A stretch of 64,000 bases of DNA. Source: Fimbriosthenelais zetlandica (lineage: Eukaryota). The DNA lies in NCBI GenBank assembly GCA_977030845.1, contig OZ365109.1, positions 53,010,001 through 53,074,000 of the forward strand, given 5' to 3'. The position numbers were made by a program, and so were the translations under genes. How positions within the stretch are numbered: position 1 is the stretch's first letter; every line of letters starts with the position of its first letter. Below are positions 1-35,270 of the stretch, piece after piece. The notes under the pieces were generated by a model. It did not search any database. It was not told the DNA's origin and saw only the letters and a list, made by a program, of their open reading frames with translations.

Positions 1-2926
1 CAGGCCTCTACTACTAAGGTCCATGGGGTTTCCATGGAAAATGCCCTCTGTTTCCCCTTACTCAGCACAAAAGAGCTACAATAGGTGGCACTAGATGCCT
101 ATAACCCCCCGGGGCACCAATTCAAATGTCGTCTACTAACCTCTGGGGGGCTATCCTGGCACCCGGCGAAAGATTTCCCGCGCTTTCTGCTGAAGCATGC
201 ATTAAAGGAGAATGGAAGGTGGTAGAACAGAGTCCCAACCTCCCTCCCGCCCTCTATCCATCCCATCCTTACCATCAACACGAGCAGAAACTTGCCCTCC
301 TGGCAGTGGAAGTGGTGCAAGGACGAAGCTTACTGCCTATTAAGCCATGGACATTTGTCAAATATGTCAGACCATCGTTGCCCATGTGTAAATTATGTAA
401 GCGGAAATGCACAAGATATACGTAAGATATGGTATTTAATAAGTGTGAAAACTTCTTGGGATTATTATCTCTAGAGTATTAAGTCATGGAATTTAAAATT
501 AATATGTCAAATGTATATCTGGTCATTCATTCAATGCAGTCCTAAAAGGATGCACTAAATTAAAAATCAAATAATAAATAAGAATGGATATTCACAGAAA
601 TTATATCTCAAGTCATCAGAAACCATTCTATCATGGATATTTTCCTAGCCTGCCATTTGTAGACTGATTGACCATCATGTAATGAGTTGAAATTTCATTT
701 TGCCCAGAGCGTGTGAGAAACATGTCATCAAACTAAATCATTTCAACTGCTGTCATCTTCAGTGTTTTATTGCATCAATCCATATCCGCTAATGCTCCAT
801 TCATTAGTGTTTTGTCAAACGGCCAAAGTCTTCCAATATGCAAATTTCCTATCTGTAATAACCATTGTTCCTGATCATAATTGGACCATCAAAAATGACG
901 AAAACACTGAGAGACAGAACAGGATGTTTTAGCGACTGACCATTAAAAGGAAATGACGACAAACAAAGGTTGCCTGACCGAGTTTCTCATTAACTTGACC
1001 TCCCCCTCTCATCTTGTGAAATTTGTCTTAATACCCCTGACGGATGAAGACGCATGACTAAGACATTCTGCCCGAGCCTTTCTTATTGATTGAAATTCCA
1101 GCTAAATTATACATAATCCCACTTGAGCCTCTTAGAAACATTTATGGGGATTGAGCATTTTTGGAGGAGAGTTCTCAGCAGTGATGGATGTGTTATTTGA
1201 AGCTGAATTGACTGCACTGTCACACTGCAACATCTAAAGCGCTTCATAAAACAAAATGAAACGACTTTTTCCCCTGTCTTTACATCATCTAAATGTCCCC
1301 GTGTATGGTTTTAAACGTCCGACTGTCGGACTTTAATAACTGGTCTATATCAGCGCAGGGCATGTTCATTAAAAATCTAGTTTATGTCAGTTGGTGACAA
1401 AGACAAATCGCTTATATTGATTCCAAAGCCAGTGGCTGACTCCCTCGTTTCCTCCTTCATCTACAGTATTCAATATATTAAAATATCACTACAAAATATG
1501 TGACCTTTTCAGTTAATACGTTTGGATATATATTTTTACACTTCTGCAGCATGATAATGTCAATGTACAGACAGAGTCAAAGGGTAGAATTATCCATTAT
1601 TTCACCTGCCTTATCTATTATAATGAGCACGAAGCGTTACATTGTACATCATGTAAATGACCTGTGCCAATCACAACCTCTCTGTCCATGTCTCTCACAC
1701 AACATTGTTGGTAATGAATTGCTGATAGGAACAGTCATAAAATCCAAATACTCATTAAGTATAAATTTATATTACCTTTGTTTGGAATGTATATAAGGAC
1801 TGTGGACACTTAGAGTCTAATTCACATATTTGGACATTTAGCAAAGTCTTGTTAGCCACCCGAAAAATCCAACCCAACTTGTCCCAATTTCGCAACCCAA
1901 TCTCAGGAAGCAATCAGAAATGTCACTCTTGCTCAAGCCTCAAATCCGGAGCCTTGCGTCGATTCACACATAAGTTATTGATGGCAAGAATTCACAAATG
2001 TAATCACAATTCATCCTGACAATTTGCTACCGTCACCGCTTGTCATTCCCGGAGGGCGACGTAATGCACGACCAGACGCCCAACTTGTCTATACAGACGC
2101 ACATACTTGCATGAATCTATTCACTGAGGGGTCTGAGGGGAAGAGCTCCGGCACGTCACTTCCAATTGACGGGCATAATTTCAGGGTCTCTGGTGGCCGA
2201 ATCTCGTAGAGAAATGAAGACAACTGTGTCAGATTGAATTATAAATGAAGGCTATTATTGCCTTCACACTTTTCTCGCCAAAACACGAAGTGTAACATTC
2301 ACCCACGGTGATAGTGTGACACTAAAGATAGGAGACTCTATTCAGATAAGGATATATAATTCCCAAATATATTTTCCTACATTCATGAAGCTAATACATG
2401 TATCTTCATGACTAAATGAAAATATTTTTTCTACAAGCCTAAATATGAATGTATACATTCGCCCTATGATAACCTTGTATCATAATATTTGGCCATTCAC
2501 ATATTTTATATACATGTAGGCCTACTTATACATACCCTTGACTATCATTGGCAACTATCATCCCAATGGTATCTATTGTTCATGGGCAGAAGCCATTTTT
2601 CTCAATAATTTGCTTCATTCCTCGGTTGTCAATGTAAAGCTGAATATATTTTATCTAACCGAAGCTTCACTTGTGCTATAGGCAGAGTCACAATTGGGCC
2701 CTTTATCATAAATCCGCTGATCTTTATTCAGAGGACATCCATTATACATTTCGGGCTTCGAGAAGCCAATTTTGGCCATTCCCTGAAGGCCAATGGCCCA
2801 GATGTTGGAGCGCCCAAGCAGAAAGCTCGCTTACCCCTTAGAACAATGACACTAGTTGAATGCCCCCCTTGAGAATAGTTCATCAGCCATTCAGTAATTT
2901 TTCTAGAAGATATGGAGTTCTGAAAA

Positions 2927-3099
2927 NNNNNNNNNNNNNNNNNNNNNNNNNNNNNNNNNNNNNNNNNNNNNNNNNNNNNNNNNNNNNNNNNNNNNNNNNN
3001 NNNNNNNNNNNNNNNNNNNNNNNNNNNNNNNNNNNNNNNNNNNNNNNNNNNNNNNNNNNNNNNNNNNNNNNNNNNNNNNNNNNNNNNNNNNNNNNNNNN
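2927..3099. other. Assembly gap (173 N)
   Basis: Run of N from 2927 to 3099. ORF-track entries crossing it are artefacts. Confidence 0.99.
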
Positions 3100-6000
3100 C
3101 TCATCCCATTCTTCTTTTCTTTTTCGTTGTTTCCCTCTGTTTTCCCTCTGTTGTCTCCCCCTGCTTCTCTCACACTCCTCGCTCCCAGCTTCCAATGCAT
3201 GCAAATCACACCAAGTGCCCAGGGGATTATCTTTCATATAATCATAACTATGAATGCTATGGATGTAAAAATGCTCGCCTATAAAAAGCCTAGCCCCATT
3301 TCTTGTATCAATCCCTGCGGGGAGACACTATGGGAATGTCCTTTGTCGCCTGCAGTGCTGATTTGTAGTGGCAGCAGATTGTCGCCATGGTGAGGAAATC
3401 GTCATAATCTCTATCGCCTTTAATGGCAACTAATTAGCATCGCTGATTGAGTGCAGATCAGTTGTTCGCCTAGGGCAGACATTGCGCTAGAAATAATGTG
3501 CGATACCATGCCATTCAGTGTACATTTAATACTACAGTCTACCTTCATAATACGTTTTGGCTACATTAACAGTAACACTCATGTCCAAAAGTATACCAAT
3601 GGAAGAATTACATATTTGGCTATTATTGTTGGAATTATTTTCGAAAAATACATTCATTCTGGCAATTCTATGACACATTTCCAACCATCGGATTATATTC
3701 GCAGGAAACAGGAAATAAGGTATAACGTATTGACATTCTGCATCAACATCGTTCACAAATTACACTGCCTTTCTGAGGATTTCTGACAATTGCTCCTGAA
3801 CGTCCTCAGTTATGACCTTACCCTGTCCTCATTTCAGTTGAGTACAGGCCAGACTGAGGTCGCCTCTTGCACCCGTTTGCCCCTTCTTGTTGAGCTTATC
3901 ATTCCAGCCCCATATACACCATTATAAGAGCTGACCTTAGCTAGGCCTCCCTCCCTCAACTTGATGCTCCCACTGATGACTGAAATGACAGGCAGTAGAG
4001 ACATGGATTGATAACTTTGTGTTATCTGTGTTGGTTCAGGTTGGTCGTGGCGGAGGGTTGAGGTTGGAAAAGGGGACAGCCTGGAGACAAGGAGCCTGCC
4101 GTTCCTTCAACTGCACGCTCTCCACCTGGAAAAGGTCGAATGGCATCAATATCTCTTCACCATGATCAATGAGACTCCACATTGAAGTAAGAGACAGATG
4201 ACAATAACCTGCACGACCCCTTCTACTGGTGCACTTATTATTGATGCTAACGTCACTTTACTTTAATGTCAAAAACATCTCTATAAAAGAAATCTCTCAT
4301 AGTGCGAGTACATTACTCTGTTGTCAAAAACGCACTGACTACAGACAATCTACACCATAATTATACCAGATAAATCTCATAATATTTCTGTACGTACATT
4401 GCTTATTACACATAATTTTCTTACAGATCTTTTATTTGGAATTTGAAATATTTTTGGGGGAATTTCAAACAATTTACATAATTGTAATGTATATATTATA
4501 TATATGCATAAATGCGCATGGACATATTTTCCCTATGGATGTATATTGTTTCAATTCCAAATAAAAAAGTGAATGATCAAGATCTAGTAGCTTGTTCTGG
4601 TAATTTCGATGAACATCTCTCTCCAGGTCATAATTAAGAATGGAGGAAGCTTGGCCCTAAAAAATCCTTTGGACTGTTAAGAAGTTTCTGCCAGTCTCTC
4701 CCACTTTTATTCATTTATTCAGGTCAACCTCATCCTGATGACCTAAATGATTGCTTCCTTGCCAAATTGCGATCTGTGGTAACTCTTTAATTGGAGATGA
4801 CTGAGTACTTCTCGGTGGGCATCTCTGGAAGAAAACTAATCATCTGATAGGTGTTTGAAATAACGATTGCCTATCGTAGTTTTTGCCAATTCATTTATCT
4901 ACTTTTTCTTGCCTTTTCAGCATCTGTGTGTGGTGGTACTCATTCCCTTTCCTGACATCCCATTGTTGTTTCTATTAATATGTAATTCAACATATCCAGT
5001 ACATTTATCTTGTTGAAATATATATCTTTATTGGCGATATGATCTGAACCTTAATGGTTGGTATTAACTGAGGCAATTAGATGACCCCAATCGCTTCATT
5101 CAGTGTGATTCTCTTACCTTCATGTATGTGGCTGCTTTCCAAAGGGATTCAGTTCCCTGTAGCGAGGAGATAAGTCAGGAATCGCCAACTAAAAATAGCA
5201 GGTACCCTTGCCGCAGGGTATACCCCGTCCACCACCGCCTAGCCCACTATTCTCCTCACTTGCGGGTATACCTGCAGGTACCCCCAGGTGCCCCATATGG
5301 AGTTTTGTCAGACTTTTCGATAAAGACGATATAAAACGCCACTCATAATGCTGCAGGGTACCCGGTCCTACCCGCTACAACTTCTTTAACTGAATATTGA
5401 ACAGATTAGAAAAAAATACGATGACCCCACCCGGGGCTACCCGCTGTTTTATGAATAGGCCAAACACCAGGTATCTTAGAGGGTACAGTTGCAGGTATAC
5501 CCGCTGTTTTATGAAGAGCATAGCCTGCGGGTCAACTAACAGGTACTGGGGTAGGTCTTGTGACAGTCACAGGTAGGCCTATTACCCGGAGAAACTCAAA
5601 GTGATAAAAGCTAGGCCCTCATGGGGCCCTTTAAGTTTAAAGGCTTGATGAATGTGTAGACTTGATTATTGTATTATCTTCCCATTGGAAGGCTAAGTTG
5701 AAGGCTATTATGTTTTTTTCCTCAAATATTTAATAAACCTAAGAGGAAGGCTAAGTTAAGGCTAAGGTATCAAAATGATCCCAGGAGGAATAGTAATACA
5801 CCATAAATTATAGTCCTGAAATTTGTATTTTTCCCGGCCGTTTTTTTTTTACTAAATTTAAGTCCTAACAGTAGGGGGTAGTCTGAGGCCCACTTTAATT
5901 TGTGAAAAAACGATTCATGGATGTCATTTACCTTCATTTAAGACACTGTTTTTCACACTTAGATAGGGGGTGGGGGTCTTGCTTAAAAAAAACCTTCGAA

Positions 6001-8823: not shown

Positions 8824-11800
8824 CCTATAGGCGGATTTTCTAACACCTCTTACAAAAAGCTCATACAATTACATTAAATACAGGTTGTCATATCAACCAA
8901 TATAATATACTATTAAATATGTGTATTTACCTTATAAAACTTCTTGGACTTGTACTTGAGTTGACTTTTGGCGACGATTCTGACTGAAAATGTCTATACG
9001 TACTACATGTAGACGTGTTGTCTCTTTGCTTGCCGGTTTCCATGTGAGGTTTTAAATATGGCTGCTATCGCGCGGCTGGGGTCACTTCCGGTTCAAGGGG
9101 GTTAGTACCCATAAACTCTACTTTCGTACGTTGCTGTATCCAGCTTTCCCGCGCTGGATATTACAGTTAAAATATACTTAGAGAAATGTAATAAAATTAT
9201 AAATACACCCAGGGAAACCAATAATTTATTATGCTTGAGCTTAGGCCGAAGTCAAAGAAATGGACCTAAAATCATGATTAGACCAATCAAGTTTTTAATA
9301 TATTTAAAAATTTGTTATTAATTGTAAACCACTTGGGTTATCAAATAGCCTATATATGGGCCAAACTAAATTTTATATTCGGAAAAAGCCCACGGCATTT
9401 TGTTACAAAAAATATCACTGATGGTTATGTTCTCACAATATTATCCTAGCCTAAATATAGGTGTTTGCTATTGGAATGAGTAGCGTTATGCCTACTATCG
9501 TCCAATGGAAATAGGCTACCTATAGGCCTATCACATTTTTCTAATCCTGATAAAAAACCAGTTTACATGCATCAAATAGCTTAATAGTGGACTTATTGAG
9601 GATTTTAATCGTCAGTTCGGAAGTCATGGGGAACTTTTTAAAAATCTAACAGTAGATTTCGCTGGGAGATACCCTAGTAATTAGGCCTAACATTTTGTCC
9701 TTAACTCATTTTTTTTTTGCAAACTGTGAACAATTTTAACTTCATTCATTTTTTTTGCATTGGACGATAACCTAGGTCTACGTCGGGGATAGTTCATGCC
9801 AGAGTATATTTGTATGCCTATTATAGGCCTACCCGGCATGGCAATATTTTGATGACCAAAAATAAGTATAGGCCTATACGCATGGTGCAAAAGGAGTGAG
9901 GGGGAACATGATGTAACATTTGTCGATAGTAATATAGCCTACCTCCAGGCATGCCTGCAACCGTACCTGCTACTATACCTGCTAATTTCTCTTTACATCT
10001 TTATAGGGGTCTGGGGTATACCTGCCACTATACCCGCTACTGTACCCGCTGTTTTGGAAAGATGTAGGAAAAAAAACATCTGGGTGTGGACGGTCCTACC
10101 CGCTATTATTAAGTTATGAGAAAAATATGTGATTTGGGTTTTGCAGGTACCCTTTAGTGTACCCGGGGTATGGTATTGAAGATTTTGGATTTTTTTTCGT
10201 ATTTAATTAAAAATGTTAGACGTGGAAAACAGCGGGTAGCCTGGGGGTATGGACGGGGCTATGGACGGGGTTATGGACGCTAACCTAGAAATAGCGGGTA
10301 GGGGACGCTGTTTCTCCCGTGAATACTAGTTGGCGATTGTTGACTATACTGGTAGCGAGACAACTGCATTTCTTCAAGACGTTCCATTATTCATTTTATA
10401 GGTCTACGGCTGGAGGTGTTTGAAGTTATTTGCATTCCATCTATTATCAAATAGGGTCAATAATATGTTTCTAAATATTTTTTTCTGGTTGCATCCGAGT
10501 TGACATCTTAATTGGTTCACTGTAACTGGCTATTCCTCTGATTAAAATGTTCAATTACGAATGATTCAGGAAAAGTGTCGATTCACAAGGTCGTCACATG
10601 TCGGAAGTATTTTGAAGTTAAATTTTAATATAGAAACTCAGCGAGGACCTGTTAAAAGGGGATGGAAACATTAGACTCATATTCAATGAAGAAGACATGT
10701 TCAGAACGATGCTTTAATTAAGATCCTTTTTATTTCGTTCATAGTACATGTGTTAGGTATCGCTCCAACATAATTAAATCCATTTCGACTGGTCTGAATT
10801 TCATTTCCTTGAGACAGACGATTAATAACCCAGTTGAGGAAAAATAAACTTTAGGAATTAAAATTTTTGAGCCGAATTTATCTTTTTAGTGCGAATTCAC
10901 TTTTGGGTTTTGAGTGTGTTAACGTACGATACAAAGTGAATACAAAAGTATGTTGTTCTACGTTCCTTTGGGATGGTGCTTAAAGCATAAAGTCGATGAT
11001 ATTGCAGGTTATATATGAATATGATATGGCACTGTCACATATAGCACTGCAATTCAGAATTTGCTTTACCAAGGGTGAAATTCCCTCGCAAAGGCAATTG
11101 CCATTGAGATGAGAAAAAAGGAAGTTTCAATTTAAAGTTCTGAGAAGTTGAGATCACATAGGACTGTATGTGGGACTCATTCTCGTACTTGTGCGCATCC
11201 CATTTGGCCCCTATTCCTGTCGGACTGGGGTGAGAGGAATGGCTTCGGTAATACTCTCCTTTTAACTACTTCAAGAGAATTAACTCATCTGCCCATTTGG
11301 ATAGAGAAATTTGCTCATCCAGTGAATTCCAATCAGTCTACTTCATTGTCTGATTGTAATATTAAATCAGAAGGAAGCCATGTTTCAATTCCGAGAGCCT
11401 TCTTAGACCTCTTTCCGTTTTCAGACCGCAGACCACAGACGCTCTTCAAAGGGAATTAAAGCCTGGTGGATTTATGTGGCAGCTTCTCGTCCCTGCTCCT
11501 CATTCCACCCACTTTAAAACTCTTCTCTATTACCATGCTCCTGTCCCCTCAAATTTGTTGGTGTCATTCTCTGAAGCACTTTCACAATTGCCACTGAGCG
11601 GACCAGCAGGATTTCTTTTGAAGCAAAAATGTCATACTGTGTTATGACGATTTGTATTTTATAATTGCATACCATACTGCTCGTATTTGTATAGCTTGTT
11701 TCAGTGGACTAAAACAGTTTAAATGACAAAGATCTATTGTCTGAACTGCAATCAGTTTGGTGTGATGAACCAGATTTTGCCTTGGGAGTTGAAAACTGCC

Positions 11801-14357
11801 ATTTTTCTAGATTTAATGTGTCCTGATATTTCCTTTTGTAAATAACGACCTTGATTTTTAAATTCAGTGTTTTAGCTCTTTCCAACTGAGCCAGTATTTC
11901 AATAACACCCAGAATAATGTTACTATGCAATGACATTAGCCGTAGAATTTCTTACTGATTTCACTCACTCACTATATTTTATTATGTTACATAGCTTTGC
12001 TACTATCCATTGGTTTATCCACGTTCCGCTCAATAAAGTACGGTTATCAGTAGAATGAGCCCTTTCATCCTGATTGCACTATGCCTATTGATAATCCAAA
12101 ATCAAATTAGAAGCCCATCCAAATGATGTCTGCCAGTCTGTGAGGCTGATTCAAGACCTTGATTAGATTGAGTATGAATCATTGTCTTGGGATAATCTTA
12201 TATGCTTTTGATCTTCGTCTTTTATCTAGACAGGTTGCTAGAACTCTGGTAGGGACATAGCCTAGCTGTTATGTTCCCAACCTTGGAAAGACAAACTTGA
12301 GAACAGTGATATATCGGATATATAACAAATAGGAAATTAGTTCTGAAGTCATGAAAATAGTCACATATTGCGAGAAATAAGGAAAAGCTCAGTGTCGTTT
12401 TGGTGTTTTTTTGCTCTCGAACCCATCCCAGCACGATGCCCCCTCTGTCGGCCGAGCCTTGTAAGCAATTCACCACCTGATTGTCTGCTTTGTGGACTGC
12501 CTATATGAGCTGTGTATGGAAATGAAGCATAAATGAAAGCATCCCTTTGTGCTGCGGTGGTATATTTCATCTGCCATTCACTAGTGTTTGTTTTCTCAAT
12601 GGAATTACGTGACACTGTACACCACCGCCTTGTTTCATTGTCATTCGTTCTTGCTGCTGACAAAAATGAGCAAAGTCTCTATTCTCTCTCATACGGACGA
12701 TTCATCCATGTCTCTACATAAATATTGCACTATAGTAGTGATTGCCATCCGTGGCAAAATGGTACAAACGTATTTTTCATCTATTGCACTAAGGATGTGA
12801 GTTAATACCTAATGAAATAAAAATTGGATCTTTGAAAATCTTCCAAGGAATCTGAATATGGACAATCTTTTAGTTCAGTAATGTCAACGCCATCAAGCCG
12901 GCAAGAAAATCTTGAGGCAATATAGTTGGGGAATGCCTCATTAATTCCCTGTGACAATTAGTTTGATTTCGATGCCTCCAATCCCTCCATTCTCTCCCTC
13001 GAGGGACAGGCGCATTAGTATTATAACTCACGATGTGGTAGTGTGACATTTTTTCCCCACACTTCCTTCTTCCCACCAACCTTGCCTCCACTTCCCAGTC
13101 ATTCAGTGAACATGGAGGGAATAGCTCTCATTCATTGACATACCAGCTTTCATGAGCATGACAGGAATATGACCTAGATTTTGGCACTCCCTTCCTCAAA
13201 AAGGTCACTTCCCTTCGGGGTTCTTCGAAATGACTTCCGGCATTGAAAATTTGATACAAAGAATTGAATTGAGATGCAACATTGTATAGCTCGGTTATAT
13301 TGACTCGTTTAGAAGACTACGTTCCTAGTTACAAGTGTTTTATTGCAATAGAAACTTGCTTATGTTGCAATAACCTAATCTCTACCAATTTTCCCCCCTT
13401 TTGATTGTAGTTAGTGAACCCAAACTGGTACCAAAATATCTAGATACAAAGGATGAATGGTCAGAAAACGCCTATTACAGGATGGTCTGGTAATTCTTTA
13501 AATAAGCCAAGTCTAGGAGTCTGGATGATACAATAGTGTATACATAATTATAGGTCCAGTGGAAATAGGTGTCCTGAGAGAGGGAATGTAGCATGTGCCA
13601 AGATAAGCAAACTGTATGACTTCAGTGATAGTATTAAAGCCAATCGTTCTAGCGAGGGTGAGTGTCCTACACACTCGTCCTTTAACAAGATTATACCAAC
13701 AATCAATGGCAGATGGGATTTAAATTCCACACACTTAGTTGTTTTTATTTGTTTAAAAAAGAGATGTAATGACTTTTAAATCTATCGCAATTACACCGGC
13801 TTCCTATCGCGTTTCCTATTACTGCATGTGGCCTTATCACACCCCGGCTCCCCTTACTACTCCCTATTTTGTGCAGTGGTAATATACTTGAAGGCCGCTT
13901 GGTGCGCTACCTACCGGCGCGGAAATAGAACTATCACATTGGTCTGGGCCGCTGTGAAAGATCTGACAAGCACATTTCAACTGCCTAAGTATTGACTGAA
14001 TCCCAGGCTGGGCGAGCGCAATTATCCGACTTGTTCCGAACCTGTCCCGAGGACCCCCGAATGCATTTGAGGGGTTGTTGTGGATGCTGACAGAAAGATT
14101 GCACATGACGACTGACAAGAGGATGACATATTGCACGACGTGTAGACGTCATAGTCAGCTCAGTCCTGACAATGTTGTCCAAACCTTTTGTTGGGGGTGT
14201 ATATTTGGTGTCTCCCGAAGATGTCAGGGTGGTGATTCAGGTTGTAGCTTAGCAGTGGTCCCGCTTCCAAAATTCATAAAAAAAATTAGAAAATCGCAGC
14301 CACTCTTAGTTAAGCATCAGAACTGTAGGCCTACCCTGTGTCCATTTATGCCATATC

Positions 14358-14632
14358 CACGGTGCCGAATCGAATTAGGGTACCGGCGCGGTACCCTAAT
14401 CAAAGATGGCGGAAGGTAGGCTCGATTCAAAAAGTTGTTCGCGTATTTCTCTTGCATCTGTCGGTTCTATTAAAAGATTTCTTGCACGTGAACAGATGAT
14501 AATACCACACATAGACTAGGTGCATTTGATAGACATAGATCCGTCGTATTTTCTTGTAATTTGCTTCGCAAACTTACGCCCTGATTAGGGTACCGTTTTC
14601 CAAAACACAACAACATCCGATTCGGCACCGTG
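14358..14632. mobile_element. 275-bp non-autonomous Transib/RAG-like element (MITE)
   Basis: Perfect 15-bp TIR CACGGTGCCGAATCG (14358-14372; reverse complement 14618-14632). Exact 5-bp TSD ATATC (14353-14357, 14633-14637). Second inverted block CGGTACCCTAATCA (14389-14402; reverse complement 14582-14595). CAC termini with a 5-bp TSD are the Transib/RAG transposon signature. Confidence 0.8.
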
Positions 14633-17600
14633 ATATCCTGAGAGAAAGAAAACCACCACTGTCGACTTCACCGTGATGGCCACTATTTATGGTGAACAGC
14701 ACAGGAAGTGACGTAGGCAAGTGCTGAGGGGATTCCCCAAAGGTCCTCAAAATCCCTCTATCCAACCGTGGCCATCTGAGCACGGTGGCGGCCCCCTATG
14801 TCGAAAAAACTCTGTTCCTAACCCCTCCCCCATTCTGATTGGCTAAGACAAGTTCACAACAAACATCATGTGAAGTCCTATGTTACAAGATGGCTGAACC
14901 CATAAATCAGTAATGTTTTCTACTGGCTATAAGTTTGTAGTGAAATCAAGAATCTATAAGGTCAGAACTTTTCTTTGGTCGAACTAGGCATATATATTAT
15001 AGATTAGCCTAGGTATGCCCACTGAAATCTTCGTGAAAGATTTTGGTCAGGGTTGTTGTCTGCGGAGGTCTGTATTTGAACAAGCATCTGAGTAAAATTG
15101 ATAAGTGGTATTAGTTACAGCCGAATCCCGCTTCTGTAATGGCACTGACCCCCGACTCAATATTGATCGTGTTCAATGTCCTCTCCATAACAACTAGGTT
15201 CAATCTAAAAGCAATAAGTGCCTGCTTAAAGGGTCGATCTCAATGTGGAATAGGAACCAGGTCTTCCATTATTGCTTTTATACCTTAAGCTCTTTTTTTC
15301 TCTGGATACTATTATTTCTGATCTTTTTATGGTTCTGAGTAGAATAAGTAACGACCAATTTGGGCTGGGTTTAAGTTGTTAGTATAGAGATCCATGATTT
15401 GATTGCTTTCTTGCCTTTTCGGTGGATGCATTAAATGATAAGGACTGTCATTCTATTAGCTCCAGTTGGTCATTTGTAGGTTTTTCAGAGGCCCCTCTAC
15501 ACTCCACAATGTAAATAAAGACAGCCTGGTGGCCCAGAGAACACGTCTAGATTACATTTGAAGTCTGGGCCTAGTGTCAAAGAGTACACGCCTTTACGGT
15601 GCCTTGTTAGAAGAGTTCTCTCGCACTCTTTTCCCTCTCCCTCCACTATGTCTTTCTAGATGTGGATGTATTGCTCGACGGAGGGAAAGGTGTGAGAGAA
15701 ACGGTGGACTCATTCAGGGGGTGCAAAAATTATATTGCATGTAATGTATAGAAGATGAAAGCCAAGCCATCCTGCTTCACCCCGCTTGCTTGAAATTAGG
15801 GCAGAATTTCTGTTCTAAATTATTGTGCAAGAAATTCTCTCTGGACTAAGGGCTCATTTCAGAGGTGTTCGAGCGAATTCTTAATTTGACTTCCACTCAA
15901 GTGTGACTTGTGAATTATGCTGGCCCTCAACTGTTCTAATCCTAACCACTCTGTCAAGCCCTCTTTAAGCCTTACCGTGTTTACCGTAGACAACCAAGGC
16001 GTTTGCCACAGGCTTTTCAACCACCTCTAATTGAATTGAGCTCAGGTAAGGTGGACTGTTGAACAGAACTCTAAGGTGGGCTAGTGGCGCAATTCAATTT
16101 GGCCCTGATTGATTCCAATGTGTGCTTTCAGAATACAGAGCCTTTCCCTAAGACTCACTTCAAGTATAGCTTACGGTCTCTTGTAGGGCTTTCACCTGCT
16201 CCTTATGCCAGGCTCTGATCATTGGTAGGGGACTACATATATATACTGATCCCTTGTATGGGGTTTAAGCAGGGCTACCAGTCCGATTGGGATTACATGT
16301 AATAAGTATAGCCCACGACTGGAATCAAAAGCTTCATAAGATTATCACTCATGGGTCAATAACCAAGGGCCTGTTTCAGAACAACCATTAGCAATGCCAA
16401 GTCTATGGGAAATTTTGACGCTGAAACGGACCTCAGGTCACCCATCCTGATGGGACTGGAATGAATCCTTCCCTATCATAGGCCTATGATCATCTGTAAA
16501 TTTGTAAAGAAAGAATAAATCCATTGTGTAAAAACAATAGATATCTAATATAGGACTGTTTTACCCCCTGACCTGGCCTTTGCTGTGATATTAAAGGAAA
16601 CATTCGATGAAACATAACTGATGGGTCAAGCATACAGTGGTATGGAATACTATCATTTCATGATTATTTTGATGAAATAAATACGTACTGTTTAGGAGTA
16701 ATCGCCGTTTCAAAATCTGACAAATAGCACTGGCAACTTTTGACCTTCCAATTCAACAAGGTGGCCATCTTGCCCGGAAGTGGGAGAACTATTCCTTTTA
16801 TATCCACGAGGTGGTAGTAGTGTGCCATATGGTATTCACCATGAAACTGTCCCTGTCATGCCCAGTCCAATGGGACACTACTGTCCTCTACAGTGAAAAG
16901 CATGTACAGTTGAAACTGTCTGAATTAATAAGTATGAGTGACATACTGTATATATGTAGCAGAAGATTCATTCTGTCGCCAATTAAGCACCTAGAATTGA
17001 AAAATCCTCCCAGTTCATGTGGGAAATGCAGTTGAAGATAACCAGGTTCACCTTTTTCCAGATTATTATGGGGCAGCCACCAATCAATATGTAATTAAGC
17101 TCGCTTCAATTGTTCAATACTTTTCACAGTTCATAACGTTATGGATGCCTCCTAATGATTTATACTGCCTTCAGAATGAAATAATATATTGTGGAGAATT
17201 TGGTTGTCGGTATTGAGTTAGATTTTATTCCTCTTCTTGTATTCATTTCAAACGAAGCGTTTTCTATTTCTGGTTAGAGCCCCAAGCTATATAGATCCTA
17301 TCTACATTTCTAAAATGACAGTCCCAAGTATTAAATTCAGTGGTGGAAGTTCCCAAGGAAAGAATGTTACTGTCTCATTGTTCTGAGACTGAATCAAGTC
17401 TGTGTCCGTGTAATTGCATATTTCTTTTTATTCTACTTGGATTATTCGATGAACAAGAGAAGTATTCGAGGTACAAATGTAATTAAATTTGTTCGTTGTC
17501 ATTCTTTTTACCCATATATCGTCATGTTGTATATCTGTGAATATTGATAGACTCGTGAACTAACGTTACTCCTGAAAAGGTTTAGTTTCGGATCTGTATG

Positions 17601-27749: not shown

Positions 27750-28420
27750 AGTCAAGATAGAGGAAGGAATTTGCTACACTTTGGTGAAAAAATCTGTTCA
27801 AAATTCCAAGTAGAAGTGAAGATGCATGCAGCCTTCCAAAGTTGGCAAGGCAGAAATTTGGGAGAAGCGCTGATTACCCTGAGTATAGCAATTTCTCACC
27901 AGAAATATTAGTTTTATACCGATAACCCCCAATATTCCAGAAATTATATAATGACACAATTCTTTGATTATTTTCTTAATCTATATCCGATTTTTATGAA
28001 GTAAATTTTATTTAGGAGATAGGATCAAGCTTTATAAAAGCATATATACTTTGATAAATGATTCCCCATAAAGCCGTTGCCATGGAATCGGAAAATTCGA
28101 ATGATATCTATTTTGCCCAAATACAAGTTGCCATGGTAACTAAAAAACAATGATTAAAAATTAATTTTTTGACCAAAATAATATTTTCATTGTATCAAGG
28201 GTAAACAATTATGAAATGTGTATTTTGACCATTTTTGAACTTTAAATTTTATTTTTTAATTTTTTTTGCCCAAATATTAGACTAAAAAGGATCGAATTTT
28301 CATTATATTTTCTGAAATTCTCGTATATTCGAACCGACGTAACTTCTTCCATATGTTAGGCATTAATATAATAGTTACATGGATGGATTCAGTGAAAGAA
28401 GTTTAAAACAGTGATACCCC
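27750..28420 (+). repeat. Diverged DNA-transposon-type repeat, inverted homologue of 34600-35270
   Basis: Collinear shared blocks with the reverse complement of 34600-35270, e.g. GGAATTTGCTA.A.TTTGGTGAAAA, CAGAAATATTA, ATCCGATTT...AAGTAAATTTTA, GTTGCCATGGTAAC.AAAA, TTGCC...AAATATTA, TGGATTCAGTGAA. Boundaries approximate. Confidence 0.7.
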
Positions 28421-30571
28421 ACATTTGAATCAAAGAATACAAATTAATATTCATCTGAAGTGTCAAATAATGGTCAAAATGGCTATTTTAAAGGTTGGCT
28501 CACTGCCTGAGAACTCTAGCACTGTCACTTCCATAGGGATTGGCATTTAAGAGTTATGAATTCATAGACCTATCGCACTAAAAATAATTATTAGGGCTAA
28601 ATAAATAATCCATATACCCAATTTATTTATGATGATTTATCAACAGGTTCTATATGGAGTATATAATATATAGTATCGGTTGAAATTGATACCCCTAGGA
28701 AGGAGTCAAAAGTTTGACCTAACCCACACGGTGATAGGTTTGACATGATGCATTGGAATGACCGTATCTGTACACATGGAAGGACAATTATCATTGATGA
28801 ATCCTTCTCAATAATAAATGGCTTAAGTGAACTGTGCTAACAGTTTGATTTTATCATGAAATTATGGGGTAGAAAATAACCCCATTAACTATGAGGGACA
28901 ATTATCAAATGGGTTGATATAGGCCTACAATGTGTCATTGAAGAAGCATGCTGCATTATGATAGTCTGCTACAGCATAGTGTCTGTGGTGTGCATAATTT
29001 GCCACAAACCCACAGGGATTAGTGCACTAAGGGCTCTAACCCCCGTGCATGGTTCCCTCAAGCCTGTCGCAAGTCATACATAAAGTATATTTTTCCCCAT
29101 AATGTAGGCTACATTTTTTATGTTCGCTCTATGATATCCCTTCCAAAATATCAGTCATGGGAACGTACTTTTATTCATGATTGATAATCAACTGAACTGA
29201 ACTGAACCAATAAGCTGGCAGCTTATAAGAGGGCAGGAAATTAAGTCCGAGTTGTATTACCCAGGGCAGCGGATGCAATTTCATTAAAGGAAAATTATGG
29301 TGAATCTAAAATAATGTGCCAAAGATAAAGTGATATAAATAGCAGATAATTCAAGATGTTTTCATGAAAAAAATCTGCAGAATATGAATAGCGTCACAAA
29401 AATAATTAATATCAAAACTAGCTCCTCCCTACCAAACCAGGTGGCTGCCATTGGTGATGTCACATGATTCCATTAGAGCCTACTGCTCATGCGCAAAGGA
29501 AGTAAAGTAAAGTAATTTTGGGTTTAGTTCCCGCCAATAGTTTTAGATGACGACACAGTGTCCCAGTTCGGCCATGAATTTTCATACAATCATACAGTGG
29601 TGTACATATTATTATTCTTAGATGAGTCACTTCTGGACGTACTCAATAAAGAGGCCGTTGCAGGATCTTTAAATGGGTATCAATTATACACAGTACTTTT
29701 TCCCATGAAGCTACATGCAGTGTATCTATATACATGTATATATATATATCACCTTATCCTCGGCCCATCATGTTAAATTTCACAAATTTTCCTTTTTTTT
29801 TAATCATCTGCCTTCATTATATCAAGGACCAATATTAATCCCATGAACAACTACATATAATATCAGGGATAACGTGTATACTGTATAATTATGGACTGCT
29901 GATCTAGGTTTCTTTCAACAGCCATTGCATATTTGACCTGCAGACACATTATCTAAAGACACTGATCCGTGACACATGGCAGTCTTTACACATTTCCTCT
30001 CTTACTCCTCAGACGTTTAGGAGACATGACTGTTGGCAATAAAGGGGTGATTCCACCTCAGATCACCCCAAAAAACGCATTTTTAAACCCCACCCCATTT
30101 GATTTCCATGAAATTTGGTGTAGGGGTATTTCATAGCCAGAAAAGCCTAAATCGCAAATTTCAGCTTGATCGGACTAGCGGTTTTTGAGATATCGCGATT
30201 TACTTTTTTCGCTTTTTCACGAAAATGGGCAGGTCGACCAAATTTAAAATTGGCTTTTCTCAGCAACCACTGGTCCAATTTCAAAAAACAAGGTATTTCT
30301 GGAAAGGGGAAATCACAAGGAATCCAAATCTGGCATTAGTCTTTGCATTTTTGTATTTTAAAGGCCAATGACCTTTTGACCTATATTTTGACCTTGAAAT
30401 TCACATTAAAGAACACGCCCGATTTCAATGACACAAATAAAAAAAATGTAGCCCCATGTGTCAACTACAACATATAAAAAAACTGGAGGGGTTTTCTTTT
30501 TCATAATTGAGAAAATCAGGATAGTATAAAGCACTACCTTTCAATCCATGGTAACTTCTGTGTAAGATTAA

Positions 30572-31503
30572 AGTGTGACTCGTGGGGCTATATATGACTA
30601 TGCATAAATATGTTCCAAATAGTGTTTAAATAATGAAAAGTCGTTTCAAATATTTTTTTCGTAATTCGAAATTTGTATAAATCCTGCGTTTTTGGAGCTA
30701 TTTTGACACCTGTCTGAAAACGGGTCGTTGAGACAGTAGGTGGCGTGGTCAGTAGCGCATGACGTCACAAATCTGCAACCCACCCACACTGATCTCTGAA
30801 CGCCCGCTTTGAGCCTCGCTCTGAGGCATCTGTGTTTGTAAACACCCGAGCGCCGACGTGGGAGAGAGCATGCACCTTTCCACTGCGAGAGAACATGCAT
30901 GACACTTGGCGGCTCTGTAGCCGATGGGGAAGTCAACAAAGTGTTGATTTGTGGGGGCGGGGGTCAAGTGAAGGCAATATATTTTTTAGTACTTAAGTTA
31001 ATAACGCCTATTAGTATTATAGGCCTCATTTAGGCGTGCCCTAGCCGTGCTCCCGGCGCCTGCTGCCCGGTACACCCCTTCAGCTCCTGGTCACTGCTCC
31101 CCACTATCATGCACACAATTTGACAGGGGACGTTTTTAGTTAATCAGTCCTAACTTGATTAAAAAAGTTAAGGACAATCTCATCTATAAAGTGTTTGGAA
31201 CAATATACCCTATACCCTATACCACTGGCTACCTCGGAACTGCCCTATTTGTAAAGTAGGAATCATCAGAAGCCATTTTCTCTCAACTAGCAATGCAGAT
31301 TTGTGACGTCACACTCCCCTGGCTCTACAGCGCTTTTAAATCCGGCGGTTTTTGTGGGAACTACATATTTTACACTTTGTAGGGCAAATAACTCATAAAA
31401 AAATTAGTGATTAAACGTTGCCTTAACATTTTATGATACCTTTACTCAACATGAATTGGTAAAAGTAAAAAAATGCTATTTTAAAATAGCCACGAGTCAC
31501 ACT
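30572..31503. mobile_element. Kolobok-like MITE (932 bp) nested in the left arm of the Sola2-like element
   Basis: TTAA TSD (30568-30571, 31504-31507) and perfect 14-bp TIR AGTGTGACTCGTGG / CCACGAGTCACACT (RR...YY termini). Internal inverted TGACGTCACAAATCTGCA motifs at about 30760 and about 31295. The right host arm retains the empty site AAGATTAAGCCT. Confidence 0.88.
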
Positions 31504-31583
31504 TTAAGCCTATGTTTGCACTGCAGTAAAGCTAGTTCTCAGACAGTGGAAGGAAATACTAGTAGCTTCAATTTCAGTGTCAC

Positions 31584-31970
31584 GGCTCTACAAATAATTG
31601 ACTTATGCAGGCACAGTGCCTTACTAGGGCACCAGACAGGCACATTTAATTCCGCACAGCTGTAAGCCATGTAGGCATATATTTTTCACCTTGATAGACG
31701 CCTCTGTTCCCATTTACAACTGAGGCAGCTTTCTCTAAAGAGTCATGGCTCTACAAATAATTAACTTAAGCAGGCACAGTGCCTTACTAAGGCACCAGAC
31801 AGGCACATCTAATTCCACACAGCTGTAAGCCATGTAGGCACATATTTTTCTCCTTGATAGACGCCTCTGTTCCCATTTACAACTGAGGTAGCTTTCTCTA
31901 AAGAGTCATGGCTCTACAAATAATTAACTTAAGCCTTACTAGGGCACCAGCCAGACACATCTAATTCCGC
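31584..31970 (+). repeat. 163-bp tandem subrepeat (about 2.3 copies) within the Sola2-like arm
   Basis: GGCTCTACAAATAATT starts at 31584, 31747 and 31910, with inverted copies at about 32605-32860. Confidence 0.92.
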
Positions 31971-34599
31971 ATTTTAAAGGCTAATGACCTTTTGACCTAT
32001 ATTTTGCCCTTGAAATTGACATTAAAGAACATCCCGACCTCAATGACACGATTACAAAAAATGTAGCCCTATGTGTCAACTACAACATATAAAGAAACTG
32101 GAGGGGTTTTCTTTTTCATTTAGATTTTTTCTACATCACACAAATTGATGTAGAAGTCGACATACCTTACTATTTTCTTCAGACATATCTAAGATCCATT
32201 CATTGTACACTGCCTGTATGTACATTTATATACACAGTATACAAGTTGATGTACTACTCAAAGAAATATTGTCAATCACAAGTACAAAAAGTCATTGAAA
32301 ACTTCACAACTGTCTCATTTTCAAACAGGGTCAATATTGTTATTTACTCCTTGTCCACAGGCAAATTCAAGTGGTGGTTAGAGATTCTGGCCAGGTCATT
32401 TAGAGAAATGCTGTACAGTTTCTTGTTGAAGATGATTTCAAGAATGGAGTGCTTATCACACAGTGTACATCTGAATCAGGAATCCAACAATGATCATCTT
32501 TGGATGGCCAATAGAAGGTCTTGGCTGATCTATGAGGGTGCATGAACTTTATCCTATAGTCACCAAACAGATTCTGAGACCAGACCAATCCATGGGAGGT
32601 TAGAAACAGAGGCGTCTATCAAGGTGAAAAATATGTGCCTACATGGCCTAGTGCCTTAGTAAGGCACTGTGCCTGCATAAGTCAATTATTTGTAAAGCCA
32701 TGACTCTTTAGAGAAAGCTGCCTCAGTTGTAAATGAGGCGTCTACCAATGTGACAAGTATGTGCCTACATGGCTTACAGCTGTGCGGAATTAAATGTGCC
32801 TGTCTGGTGCCCTAGTAAGGCACTGTGCCTGCATAAGTCAATTATTTGTAGAGCCGTGACACTGAAATTGAAGCTACTAGTATTTCCTTCCACTGTCTGA
32901 GAACTAGCTTTACTGCAGTGCAAATATAGGCTTAATCTTGCACAGAAGTTACCATGGATTGAAAGGTAGTGCTTTATACTATCCTGATTTTCTCAATTAT
33001 GAAAAAGAAAACCCCTCCAGTTTTTTTATATGTTGTAGTTGACACATAGGGCTACATTTTTTTTATTTGTGTCATTGAAATCGGGCGTGTTCTTTAATGT
33101 GAATTTCAAGGTCAAAATATAGGTCAAAAGGTCATTGGCCTTTAAAACGCAAAAATGCAAAGACTAATGTCAGATTTGGATTCCTTGTGATTTCCCCTTT
33201 CCAGAAATACCTTGTTTTTTGAAATTGGACCAGTGGTTGCTGAGAAAAGCCAATTTTAAATTTGGTCGACCTGCCCATTTTCGTGAAAAAGCGAAAAAAG
33301 TAAATCGCGATATCTCGGAAACCGCTAGTCCGATCAAGCTGAAATTTGAGATTTAGGCTTTTCTGGCTATGACTAACCTACAAACCAAATTGCAAAGTCT
33401 GACAAAGTAGGGTTTAACTGACTGGGTGAACTGAGGTGGACTCACCCAAAGACAGCATTCCACTATTTACAGCCCCAATTTCTATCCCCATACCAGTGTT
33501 ATTAGCAGCTTGACCTCCCTCGGTGCCCCTGGAAAGGGTGCAGACCATATACATCGTGACTGTATAGTACATACAATTCATTCATGTTCCTCACCCGAAC
33601 TATCATCACTTTAATGAAGAGGAACGCAGTCTTTGTCAAACGCGAGTTAAAATAATAGTTTATCCATCTAATGACATCAGTTATTTTCAGAGATACTTTT
33701 CATAATTATATAATCAACTATATATTAGTTCAGTTAGTGCATGTATTTACTCTAATTACGAAATCTATTGTGGCTTCTTTCCTGGTTTGACATGTGTACA
33801 TCTCAGTTTTATGTATAACTGAATTATTTGCTGTAAGATAAAGGACTGAACATTCAGTTTTCCGGCTAGCCGAGTCATGTTTATTTAACTTCTTGATATA
33901 TATTTTTTTAATTCTTTTATTTAACCTGTTGGTAAGTGAAGGGGGTGAAGTGGGTAAGTGAAAACCGACCGACTATAACTATATTATGTAGACAGAATAT
34001 CTATATCACAACTATATAAAACGCTGTCCATAACACACTATATAGGCTCACACAAAACATAACACTGGATTAACATATCTAACACAGTTTTTAACATAAT
34101 TATGGAATGGTATTGCTCTCCCATTACAAATATATCAAATGAGTTTTTTAGTAGCATATCCCGTACAGAGTCAATTTTATGGTAAACAAAACACTTCCCA
34201 TATTCAAGTATCCTAAATGAAAACCTCTAGCTGTTCCTAAGAAATTATCCATGTTGACTCAGTTTAAGATTCAAGTTAGTCTTCACTAATACAATTTGAA
34301 TACTACTTAGGTAGGACCTATAGATCTAAAAGATTTTTTTTTTTTTACAATGGTTAGCTACTTGTGGGAATATGCTCACAGTTCCTTGCTGGTTAGAAGG
34401 AAAGTTAGATGCATGCAACCTTCTTTGCTTATTGCACTGACTGGTGTGCACAAAGTAGCCAGCCATAACCCTTTCGGGACGGCCAAAAATTTAGTGCATC
34501 CCCTGAGAGGACGAGGGTTACTGCCATAGGGTCCAAAAAGGGGATTTTTCTGAGTTTTTAGACACCATGAGTGCCCCCAAAAGCTTTCACAACATTTTA

Positions 34600-35270
34600 A
34601 TACCAGCTGTTTTATTGTTCAACCAGATTCACTGAATCCAACTATCTAACAATTATTTCAGTGCCATACATCTGTGAAAAGCTACTAGCATAAGATTTAA
34701 AACAATATTTTCAAAACTTTGGCCCCTTTTATGATAATATTTAGGGCAAGAAAATGAGAAAATATTTCTAAAAATCCCCTCAAAAACCCCTAAATATCTC
34801 AGACATAAAATGTTCCCCCGAATTAAATAACATTTTTTTCTTGGCAGAAAAATTATTTTATAACTGGAAATTTTGGTTACCATGGCAACAAAATTTTCTG
34901 AAAAAATGAGGTCCCTGACTTTGGTTGTTACCATGGAAACGGTCTTCAAAAGAAATTCTAAAATACCAGTAAATACCTCAAGCCAAGAATTTGACTTACC
35001 AACTAAAATTTACTTTGCATAAATCGGATCAGAATTTAGGAAATAGTGAACAAAATACTTAATATTAGTTTTCCTATAACTTTTTTCTTCCAAATGTAGA
35101 GTCATTTTTTCTATATAAATATTGGGCTTTCGGGAAATTAATATTTCTGAAAAACAATGGACATTACCGAATTCGAAAGTCAATATCTCGGCTTTCAGTT
35201 GGAATATTGAAACAAAATTTTCACCAAAATATAGCAAATTCCCCATTCTAAATCGGTCAAAAATAGCTCA
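34600..35270 (-). repeat. Diverged DNA-transposon-type repeat, inverted homologue of 27750-28420
   Basis: See partner. Contains GTTACCATGGCAAC (34876-34889) and GTTACCATGGAAAC (34927-34940). Confidence 0.7.

What the first reader, a model, noticed from the sequence alone, without database searches (positions are those of the whole stretch)
14353..14637. Miniature Transib/RAG-like element with RSS-like, asymmetric bipartite ends
Seen: both ends begin CACGGTG, one base from the V(D)J heptamer CACAGTG, and are flanked by a 5-bp TSD (ATATC). Each end is bipartite: a 15-bp terminal block, then a spacer of different length (16 bp left, 22 bp right; 24 vs 30 bp from the heptamer), then a shared 14-bp block CGGTACCCTAATCA. 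The left spacer also forms a perfect 12-bp hairpin (14374-14400). Established: CAC termini with 5-bp TSDs define Transib and RAG(-like) transposons, and ProtoRAG/RAG ends have a heptamer plus a second element at asymmetric spacing. RAG-like transposons are reported in some protostomes. Inference: this may be a non-autonomous derivative of a Transib or RAG-like family, recently mobile because TIRs and TSD are intact, possibly with its own spacer rule.
Basis: partly seen in the sequence, partly recalled or inferred. Interest (0 to 1): 0.72.

Follow-up and report, generated by a model that had tools for sequence, protein, structure and literature searches.

The report
Small CAC-ended jumping gene, five-base duplication
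This is a real 275-base non-coding cut-and-paste transposon whose ends and five-base target duplication best fit the Transib family, an ordinary kind of element, and neither a link to RAG-like transposons nor a spacer rule could be shown from this one copy.

Summary
At 14358-14632 lies a 275-bp element with perfect 15-bp terminal inverted repeats starting CACGGTG (17 of 18 over 18 bp). It is flanked by an exact 5-bp duplication, ATATC, and a 14-bp inner block sits 16 bp (left) and 22 bp (right) inside the terminal block. It is the only such CAC/5-bp pair in the 64-kb window; composition-matched random sequences gave none.

The element is non-coding and matches no Rfam family. It is best read as a miniature cut-and-paste transposon moved by a transposase encoded elsewhere.

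CAC ends plus a 5-bp duplication point to Transib. That is a structural guess (about 0.5), because no second copy, parent element, close relative or sequencing run could be reached.

The RAG-like reading is not supported. The ends match the published protostome RAG-like end consensus at only 6 of 17 positions, and the target is AT-rich rather than GC-rich.

The left "spacer" is really a third, inverted copy of the inner block. The asymmetry may therefore be a local duplication rather than a rule. Asymmetric bipartite Transib ends were already described in 2005.

Rivals are the hAT5 lineage (also 5-bp duplications) and CACTA-type elements.

The scan had already flagged six similar CAC/5-bp elements elsewhere in this genome. 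For the one that was followed up, no transposase could be reached.

The parts
14353..14357 (.). Left copy of the 5-bp target-site duplication, ATATC
   Evidence: Identical to 14633-14637 and directly next to the element end. Only a length of 5 gives identical flanks.
14358..14632 (+). The whole 275-bp non-autonomous element (MITE)
   Evidence: It is the only CAC...GTG inverted pair with a 5-bp duplication in the window, with 0 in 30 random controls. It has no second copy in the window, no Rfam or tRNA hit, and no ORF that lies within the element.
14358..14375 (+). Left terminal inverted repeat: 15 bp perfect, 18 bp with one mismatch, heptamer CACGGTG
   Evidence: the repeat finder I1 and an exact 15-mer match.
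14615..14632 (-). Right terminal inverted repeat
   Evidence: the repeat finder I1 and an exact 15-mer match on the minus strand.
14372..14385 (-). Third, inverted copy (12 of 14) of the subterminal block; it forms the left 'spacer' and one arm of the hairpin
   Evidence: Pattern search with 2 mismatches, inverted repeat I3, DNA fold.
14389..14402 (+). Left subterminal 14-bp block, a candidate second transposase-binding site, starting at position 32 from the end
   Evidence: Exact inverted match to 14582-14595. Three matches found against 0.29 expected by chance.
14582..14595 (-). Right subterminal 14-bp block, starting at position 38 from the end
14403..14581 (.). Internal non-coding filler, 179 bp
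   Evidence: No repeat, RNA family or similarity within the window.
14633..14637 (.). Right copy of the target-site duplication, ATATC; also the start of the older host repeat
   Evidence: The paralogous repeat copy at 39355-39141 carries ATATCC once.
14630..14835 (+). Older dispersed repeat, 72% identical to 39355-39141 on the minus strand, at or into whose left edge the element inserted
   Evidence: blastn, nhmmer E = 1.8e-21, MAFFT alignment.

Best explanation
A 275-bp non-autonomous cut-and-paste DNA transposon (MITE) inserted at a single ATATC site, at or just inside the edge of an older repeat.

It encodes nothing. It would be moved in trans by a DDE transposase that recognises the 15-18-bp terminal repeat and probably the 14-bp subterminal block. 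That block is present once at the right end and as an inverted pair at the left end. Staggered cuts 5 bp apart in the target produced the duplication.

By its structure (CAC...GTG ends, a heptamer one base from the RSS heptamer, an exact 5-bp duplication) the most likely mobiliser is a Transib-superfamily, RAG1-core-like transposase. That enzyme would excise by nicking and hairpin formation on the flanking DNA.

Shown: the anatomy, that it is not chance, and the 5-bp duplication. Inferred: the superfamily, the binding role of the inner block, and the mechanism.

The 16/22-bp asymmetry is most simply a palindromic duplication of the inner block at the left end. I do not take it as a demonstrated spacer rule.

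Confidence that it is a MITE with a 5-bp duplication is about 0.9. Confidence that it is Transib-type is about 0.5, and that is the figure given below.
For: - Anatomy at exact coordinates.
- Unique in the window, with 0 in 30 random controls.
- Only a 5-bp flanking repeat is identical; the chance of that is about 1 in 1000.
- Joining the two flanks with one ATATC (the pre-insertion sequence) aligns without a break to a paralogous repeat copy that carries ATATCC once.
- In 2005 Transib was described as the only superfamily with 5-bp duplications, with invariant CAC ends and bipartite ends. Several of its families have 12/23-like asymmetric ends (PMC1131882).
- Repbase classifies non-autonomous elements by exactly these terminal and duplication features (PMC4455052).
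- Six other CAC/5-bp elements were noted elsewhere in this genome (unchecked notes).
Against: - No transposase, second copy or relative was reached.
- The target is AT-rich: ATATC, and 13 of 35 GC around the site. Transib and RAG favour GC-rich sites (PMC1131882, PMC10629977).
- There is no A-rich nonamer at the left end. The right end has only AAAA at positions 34-37.
- No autonomous Transib has been noted in 685 scanned windows of this genome, while CACTA-type elements are common there.
- Duplication length and end sequence vary even within Transib, so structure alone does not settle the family (bioRxiv 10.64898/2026.08.26.747230).
Confidence: 0.5

Rival explanations
1. A MITE of the hAT5 lineage: hAT transposons that make 5-bp rather than 8-bp duplications, mobilised by a hAT transposase that binds short terminal repeats plus subterminal repeats.
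For: - hAT5 families with 5-bp duplications exist in a lineage of animal hAT families (PMC12730594).
- hAT elements favour AT-rich targets (PMC1131882), and this site is AT-rich.
- Short terminal repeats with repeated subterminal motifs are typical of hAT (general knowledge).
- The end CACGG fits the hAT pattern YARNG at 4 of 5 positions.
Against: The third base is C. In the 22 hAT families compared in PMC1131882 (Fig. S7 legend) it is always G, and that paper uses this to tell hAT ends from RSS/Transib ends. I could not inspect hAT5 ends themselves.
Confidence: 0.15
2. A MITE of the CMC group (CACTA/EnSpm, Mirage, Chapaev), whose transposase and accessory protein bind subterminal motifs in direct and inverted orientation, as in maize En/Spm.
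For: - The terminus is CAC.
- A 12-14-bp subterminal motif occurs in both orientations, including an inverted pair.
- Thirteen earlier notes describe CACTA/EnSpm elements in this genome, some apparently intact (unchecked).
Against: - CMC duplications are 2-4 bp. Here 2-, 3- and 4-bp flanks differ and only 5 bp matches.
- The end is CACGG, not CACTA.
Confidence: 0.12
3. One reading: a derivative of a RAG-like (RAG1L-RAG2L) transposon whose bipartite, asymmetric ends obey a family-specific spacer rule.
For: - CAC ends and a 5-bp duplication.
- The formal layout (heptamer, conserved adjacent 8 bp, unequal spacer, second block) parallels the heptamer-TR2-asymmetric spacer-nonamer ends of acorn-worm RAGL-A (PMC10629977) and the 27/31-bp ProtoRAG ends (PMC8289069).
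- RAG-like transposons exist in molluscs and nemerteans (PMC7204232).
Against: - Only 6 of 17 positions match the protostome RAG-like end consensus, with no AAA at positions 8-10.
- No CACGG-type end appears in that paper's supplements.
- The second block is not AT-rich, and the duplication is AT-rich rather than GC-rich.
- The asymmetry is 6 bp, seen in a single copy, and explained by an inverted copy of the block.
Confidence: 0.06
4. A member of an undescribed or unclassified inverted-repeat transposon family that happens to combine CAC ends with a 5-bp duplication.
For: - End sequence and duplication length are evolutionarily labile.
- Nothing ties this element to any transposase.
Against: Less economical than assignment to a known superfamily with exactly this signature.
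Confidence: 0.1
5. A chance inverted repeat and not a mobile element.
For: Only one copy is available.
Against: - 15 of 15 terminal bases plus 14 of 14 inner bases match, with an exact 5-bp flank.
- 0 in 30 random controls.
- The 14-bp block occurs 3 times against 0.29 expected.
Confidence: 0.02

Closest known systems
Non-autonomous Transib elements (for example the TransibN families of mosquitoes and flies; Kapitonov and Jurka 2005, PMC1131882)
   Same: - CAC...GTG termini with a heptamer like that of the RSS.
- An exact 5-bp duplication.
- Short and non-coding.
- Bipartite ends with a second conserved block about 23-30 bp inside. In some published families the two ends have unequal spacers.
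   Different: - The second block here is a mixed-composition 14-mer, not an A-rich nonamer.
- The spacers are 24 and 30 bp from the heptamer, not 12 and 23.
- The target is AT-rich.
- No transposase link was shown.
Protostome RAG-like transposons and their non-autonomous derivatives (Martin et al. 2020, PMC7204232); acorn-worm RAGL-A ends (PMC10629977)
   Same: CAC start, a 5-bp duplication, about 15 bp of conserved terminal sequence, and the idea of a conserved stretch next to the heptamer.
   Different: - Only 6 of 17 positions match the consensus.
- No A-rich region at positions 8-10.
- The duplication is AT-rich rather than GC-rich.
hAT5 elements (Kapitonov and Jurka 2007, cited in PMC12730594)
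   Same: A 5-bp duplication, short terminal repeats, subterminal repeats and an AT-rich target.
   Different: The third terminal base is C rather than the G or purine of hAT ends.
CACTA/EnSpm (CMC) non-autonomous elements
   Same: A CAC terminus, and a 12-14-bp subterminal motif in direct and inverted orientation.
   Different: A 5-bp rather than 2-4-bp duplication, and CACGG rather than CACTA.

Membership tests
MITE (structural class) | Short, non-coding, with terminal inverted repeats and a flanking target-site duplication | tested here: met
   275 bp, 15-18-bp terminal repeats, ATATC duplication, no ORF that lies within the element and no RNA family.
MITE (structural class) | Many copies in the genome | not testable with these tools
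   One copy in 64 kb.
Transib superfamily | 5-bp target-site duplication | tested here: met
   ATATC on both sides. Flanks of 2, 3, 4 and 6 bp do not match. Controls.
Transib superfamily | Termini 5'-CAC...GTG-3' with an RSS-like heptamer | tested here: met
   CACGGTG at both ends. That is 6 of 7 to CACAGTG and 5 of 7 to the Transib consensus CACAATG.
Transib superfamily | A 38-bp end with an A-rich nonamer after a spacer of about 23 bp | tested here: inconclusive
   The right end has AAAA at positions 34-37. The left end has no A-rich stretch at either the 12- or the 23-bp spacing. Instead a 14-bp mixed block starts at position 32 (left) and 38 (right) (against PMC1131882).
Transib superfamily | [quoted passage not shown] | tested here: not met
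   The duplication is 1 of 5 GC and the 35-bp site is 13 of 35 GC, equal to the local background of 0.42. This is one event, so it carries little weight.
Transib superfamily | An autonomous partner with the same ends encoding a RAG1-core-like DDE transposase | not testable with these tools
   No transposase among the ORFs of 95 aa or more that were scanned: 13 of the 25 listed, and only FkbM and P450 matched a Pfam family. No other part of the genome was reachable.
Transib superfamily | Repbase rule for non-autonomous elements: the same duplication length and terminal positions 1-11 alignable, with at most 1 mismatch, to a classified family | not testable with these tools
   The rule is quoted from PMC4455052. 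No Repbase or Dfam library was available.
RAG-like (RAGL) transposons of protostomes | An end matching CACTWMCAAACKTYKBB, including AAA at positions 8-10 | tested here: not met
   6 of 17 positions match, and positions 8-10 are CCG. No CACGG-type end in the paper's supplements.
RAG-like (RAGL) transposons of protostomes | A convergent RAG1L-RAG2L gene pair in the autonomous element | not testable with these tools
   No autonomous element was reachable.
CMC (CACTA/Mirage/Chapaev) | Target-site duplication of 2-4 bp | tested here: not met
   Next to the CAC/GTG ends the 2-, 3- and 4-bp flanks differ (TC/AT, ATC/ATA, TATC/ATAT). Only 5 bp matches. The range is quoted.
hAT5 lineage of hAT | 5-bp target-site duplication | tested here: met
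   The definition is from PMC12730594.
hAT5 lineage of hAT | hAT-type terminus with G (a purine) at position 3 | tested here: not met
   Position 3 is C. The criterion comes from the PMC1131882 Fig. S7 legend. Ends of hAT5 itself could not be inspected.

The most novel reading that the evidence does not exclude
The element belongs to a spiralian Transib/RAG-like family whose transposase needs a bipartite end (heptamer, adjacent conserved 8 bp, second 14-bp block) with different spacing at the two ends. That would be a spacer rule that arose independently of 12/23, with a palindromic double site marking the left end.
Probability: 0.05. Interest if true: 0.55.

Novelty: new member of a known kind. 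Interest (0 to 1): 0.18.

Why it matters
As it stands, it matters little. It is one more small non-coding transposon in an invertebrate genome. The features that made it look special (an RSS-like heptamer, a 5-bp duplication, bipartite and unequal ends) were described for Transib elements in 2005.

It would become interesting only if genome-wide copies showed that the two spacer lengths are fixed, and if the parent element proved to encode a RAG1-like transposase, with or without a RAG2-like partner. That would add a spiralian example to the debate on when asymmetric recombination signals arose.

A practical lesson for the scan: "CAC plus 5 bp" is not exclusive to Transib/RAG, because hAT5 also makes 5-bp duplications. 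Single copies of this kind should therefore be pooled genome-wide rather than followed up one at a time.

Tried and rejected
**Looking for other copies or the parent element (all blank)**
- Window search for the 15-bp end with up to 3 mismatches, plus blastn of the element against the window: no second copy.
- Sequencing runs: none was listed, so no read laying was possible.
- Metagenome contigs: the strict end-plus-block pattern gave 0. The 18-mer end gave 48 single hits, all on contigs of 48-73% GC (mostly about 60% or more, bacterial-looking), with no partner end and no inner block; these are chance matches.
- Viral contigs: 0 for the end and 0 for the palindrome.
- Prokaryotic genome contigs: 0.
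- Earlier findings searched by sequence and by relatives: nothing.

**Identifying the species or an orthologous empty site**
- The nearby single-exon FkbM methyltransferase gene is not on record with either of two start codons.
- Its best homologues are only 34-40% identical (Patella, Lineus, Gigantopelta), so no close genome was available.

**Looking for a transposase in the window**
- Of the 25 ORFs of 95 aa or more, 13 were scanned against Pfam. Only FkbM and cytochrome P450 fragments matched.

**Literature**
- No held paper pairs CACGGTG with Transib.
- The two HzTransib papers that would show its ends are not held. My recollection that HzTransib ends begin CACGGTG is therefore unverified and is not used as evidence.

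**Readings rejected**
- Solo LTR: the ends are CA...TG, not TG...CA.
- Tc1/mariner: no TA duplication.
- A 3-bp duplication extended by chance: the flanks next to the ends differ at 3 bp.

Full report
**What is there**

- A 275-bp element (14358-14632) begins and ends with the same 15 bases in inverted orientation, starting CACGGTG. The repeat reaches 18 bp with one mismatch.
- It is flanked on both sides by ATATC.
- An exact 14-bp block lies inside each end: 14389-14402 on the plus strand and 14582-14595 on the minus strand.
- The stretch between the terminal block and the inner block is 16 bp on the left and 22 bp on the right.
- A pattern search shows that the left stretch is itself an inverted 12/14 copy of the inner block (14372-14385). 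That copy creates the perfect 12-bp hairpin, which folds as DNA at -11.9 kcal/mol with z = -5. The right end has no such structure.

**Is it more than chance?**

Yes.
- The 15-mer occurs only at these two places in the window, even allowing three mismatches.
- The inner block occurs three times against 0.29 expected.
- My scan for any CAC...GTG inverted pair (at least 12 of 13 matching) with an identical 5-bp flank finds this pair alone, and none in 30 composition-matched random sequences.
- With the ends fixed at CAC/GTG, the flanking 2-, 3-, 4- and 6-mers differ and only the 5-mer is identical. The duplication length is therefore well defined for this copy.

**Surroundings**

- The element lies in non-coding DNA, about 8 kb from a single-exon FkbM-type methyltransferase gene.
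- Its right flank belongs to an old dispersed repeat. The stretch 14630-14835 matches 39355-39141 on the minus strand at 72% identity (nhmmer E = 1.8e-21).
- Joining the two flanks with a single ATATC reconstructs the pre-insertion sequence. This aligns to the second copy without a break across the junction, and that copy carries ATATCC once. This fits an insertion with a 5-bp duplication.
- It is only suggestive, because the left flank alone does not align significantly (anchored test p about 0.05).

**What it is**

- It has no ORF that lies within it, no tRNA and no Rfam family. It is a miniature non-autonomous cut-and-paste transposon.
- Age is only loosely bounded. There is at most one mismatch in 37 paired positions (duplication, terminal repeat, inner block). 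By my own estimate, that implies less than roughly 4-6% neutral divergence since insertion, assuming the arms were identical at that time. This fits "fairly young" but does not show recent movement.

**Which family?**

For Transib:
- Transib was defined by 5-bp duplications, invariant CAC ends and a bipartite 38-bp end: heptamer CACAATG, a spacer of about 23 bp, then an A-rich nonamer.
- Several Transib families already have 12/23-like unequal ends (PMC1131882).
- Repbase classifies non-autonomous elements on exactly such terminal and duplication features (PMC4455052).
- On that basis the element is Transib-type.

Reasons for caution:
- The target is AT-rich (1 of 5 GC in the duplication, 13 of 35 around the site). 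Transib, RAG and RAG-like elements favour GC-rich sites.
- The second block is not an A-rich nonamer.
- The hAT5 lineage also makes 5-bp duplications (PMC12730594). hAT ends, however, carry G rather than C at position 3 (PMC1131882 Fig. S7 legend).
- End sequence and duplication length vary even within Transib, so structure should not override transposase homology (bioRxiv 10.64898/2026.08.26.747230).

CACTA-type elements are common in this genome according to earlier notes, and they share the CAC end and two-way subterminal motifs. Their 2-4-bp duplication is not met here.

**RAG-like?**

- The protostome RAG-like end consensus is CACTWMCAAACKTYKBB, with a conserved AAA at positions 8-10 (PMC7204232). 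This element matches 6 of 17 positions and has CCG at 8-10.
- No CACGG-type end appears in that paper's supplementary files.
- The layout (heptamer, conserved adjacent 8 bp, unequal spacer, second block) does formally parallel acorn-worm RAGL-A ends (PMC10629977) and the 27/31-bp ProtoRAG ends (PMC8289069). That is a resemblance of architecture, not of sequence.
- As an aside, CACGGTG is among the heptamers that work best for vertebrate RAG. Followed by CC, as here, it falls among the poorly recombining combinations (PMC9723617).

**The spacer asymmetry**

- One copy cannot show a rule.
- The left spacer is an inverted copy of the inner block. The simplest account is therefore a palindromic duplication, or a double binding site, at the left end.
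- Indels between the arms of long imperfect inverted repeats are commonplace.

**What could not be done**

- No second copy, parent element, sequencing run, close relative or orthologous site could be reached.
- The window holds no transposase among the ORFs scanned against Pfam.
- Earlier notes list six other CAC/5-bp elements in this genome and no autonomous Transib. The one that was followed up met the same dead end.

**Verdict**

- The RAG-like origin and the private spacer rule are not supported by what could be tested.
- It is an ordinary new member of a known kind.

Noticed in passing
window 30109-33394: A foldback-like structure. The outer inverted arms are 463 nt at 97% identity (30109-30571 and 32932-33394). 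Nested inverted arms of 201 nt at 97% (31504-31704 and 32735-32935) and several shorter ones lie inside.
   Followed up: no
window 14630-14835 and 39141-39355 (minus strand): Two copies of an old dispersed repeat, 72% identical. The MITE sits at or just inside the left edge of the first copy.
   Followed up: partly
window 42291-42665 and 53227-53562 (minus strand): Exon-like ORFs matching cytochrome P450 (Pfam E = 3.5e-16, and a weaker 2.5e-4). A multi-exon P450 gene probably spans this part of the window.
   Followed up: no
window 10045-10236; 34539-34780; 27959-28438: Other small candidates with an 11-bp exact inverted end and a flanking repeat (TA, CAAAA and ACA respectively), from a generic scan. 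Unchecked; some may be chance.
   Followed up: no
window 2927-3099: A run of 173 N. The two overlapping 'ORFs' at 2728-3237 (-) and 2860-3393 (+) read through it and are artefacts.
   Followed up: no
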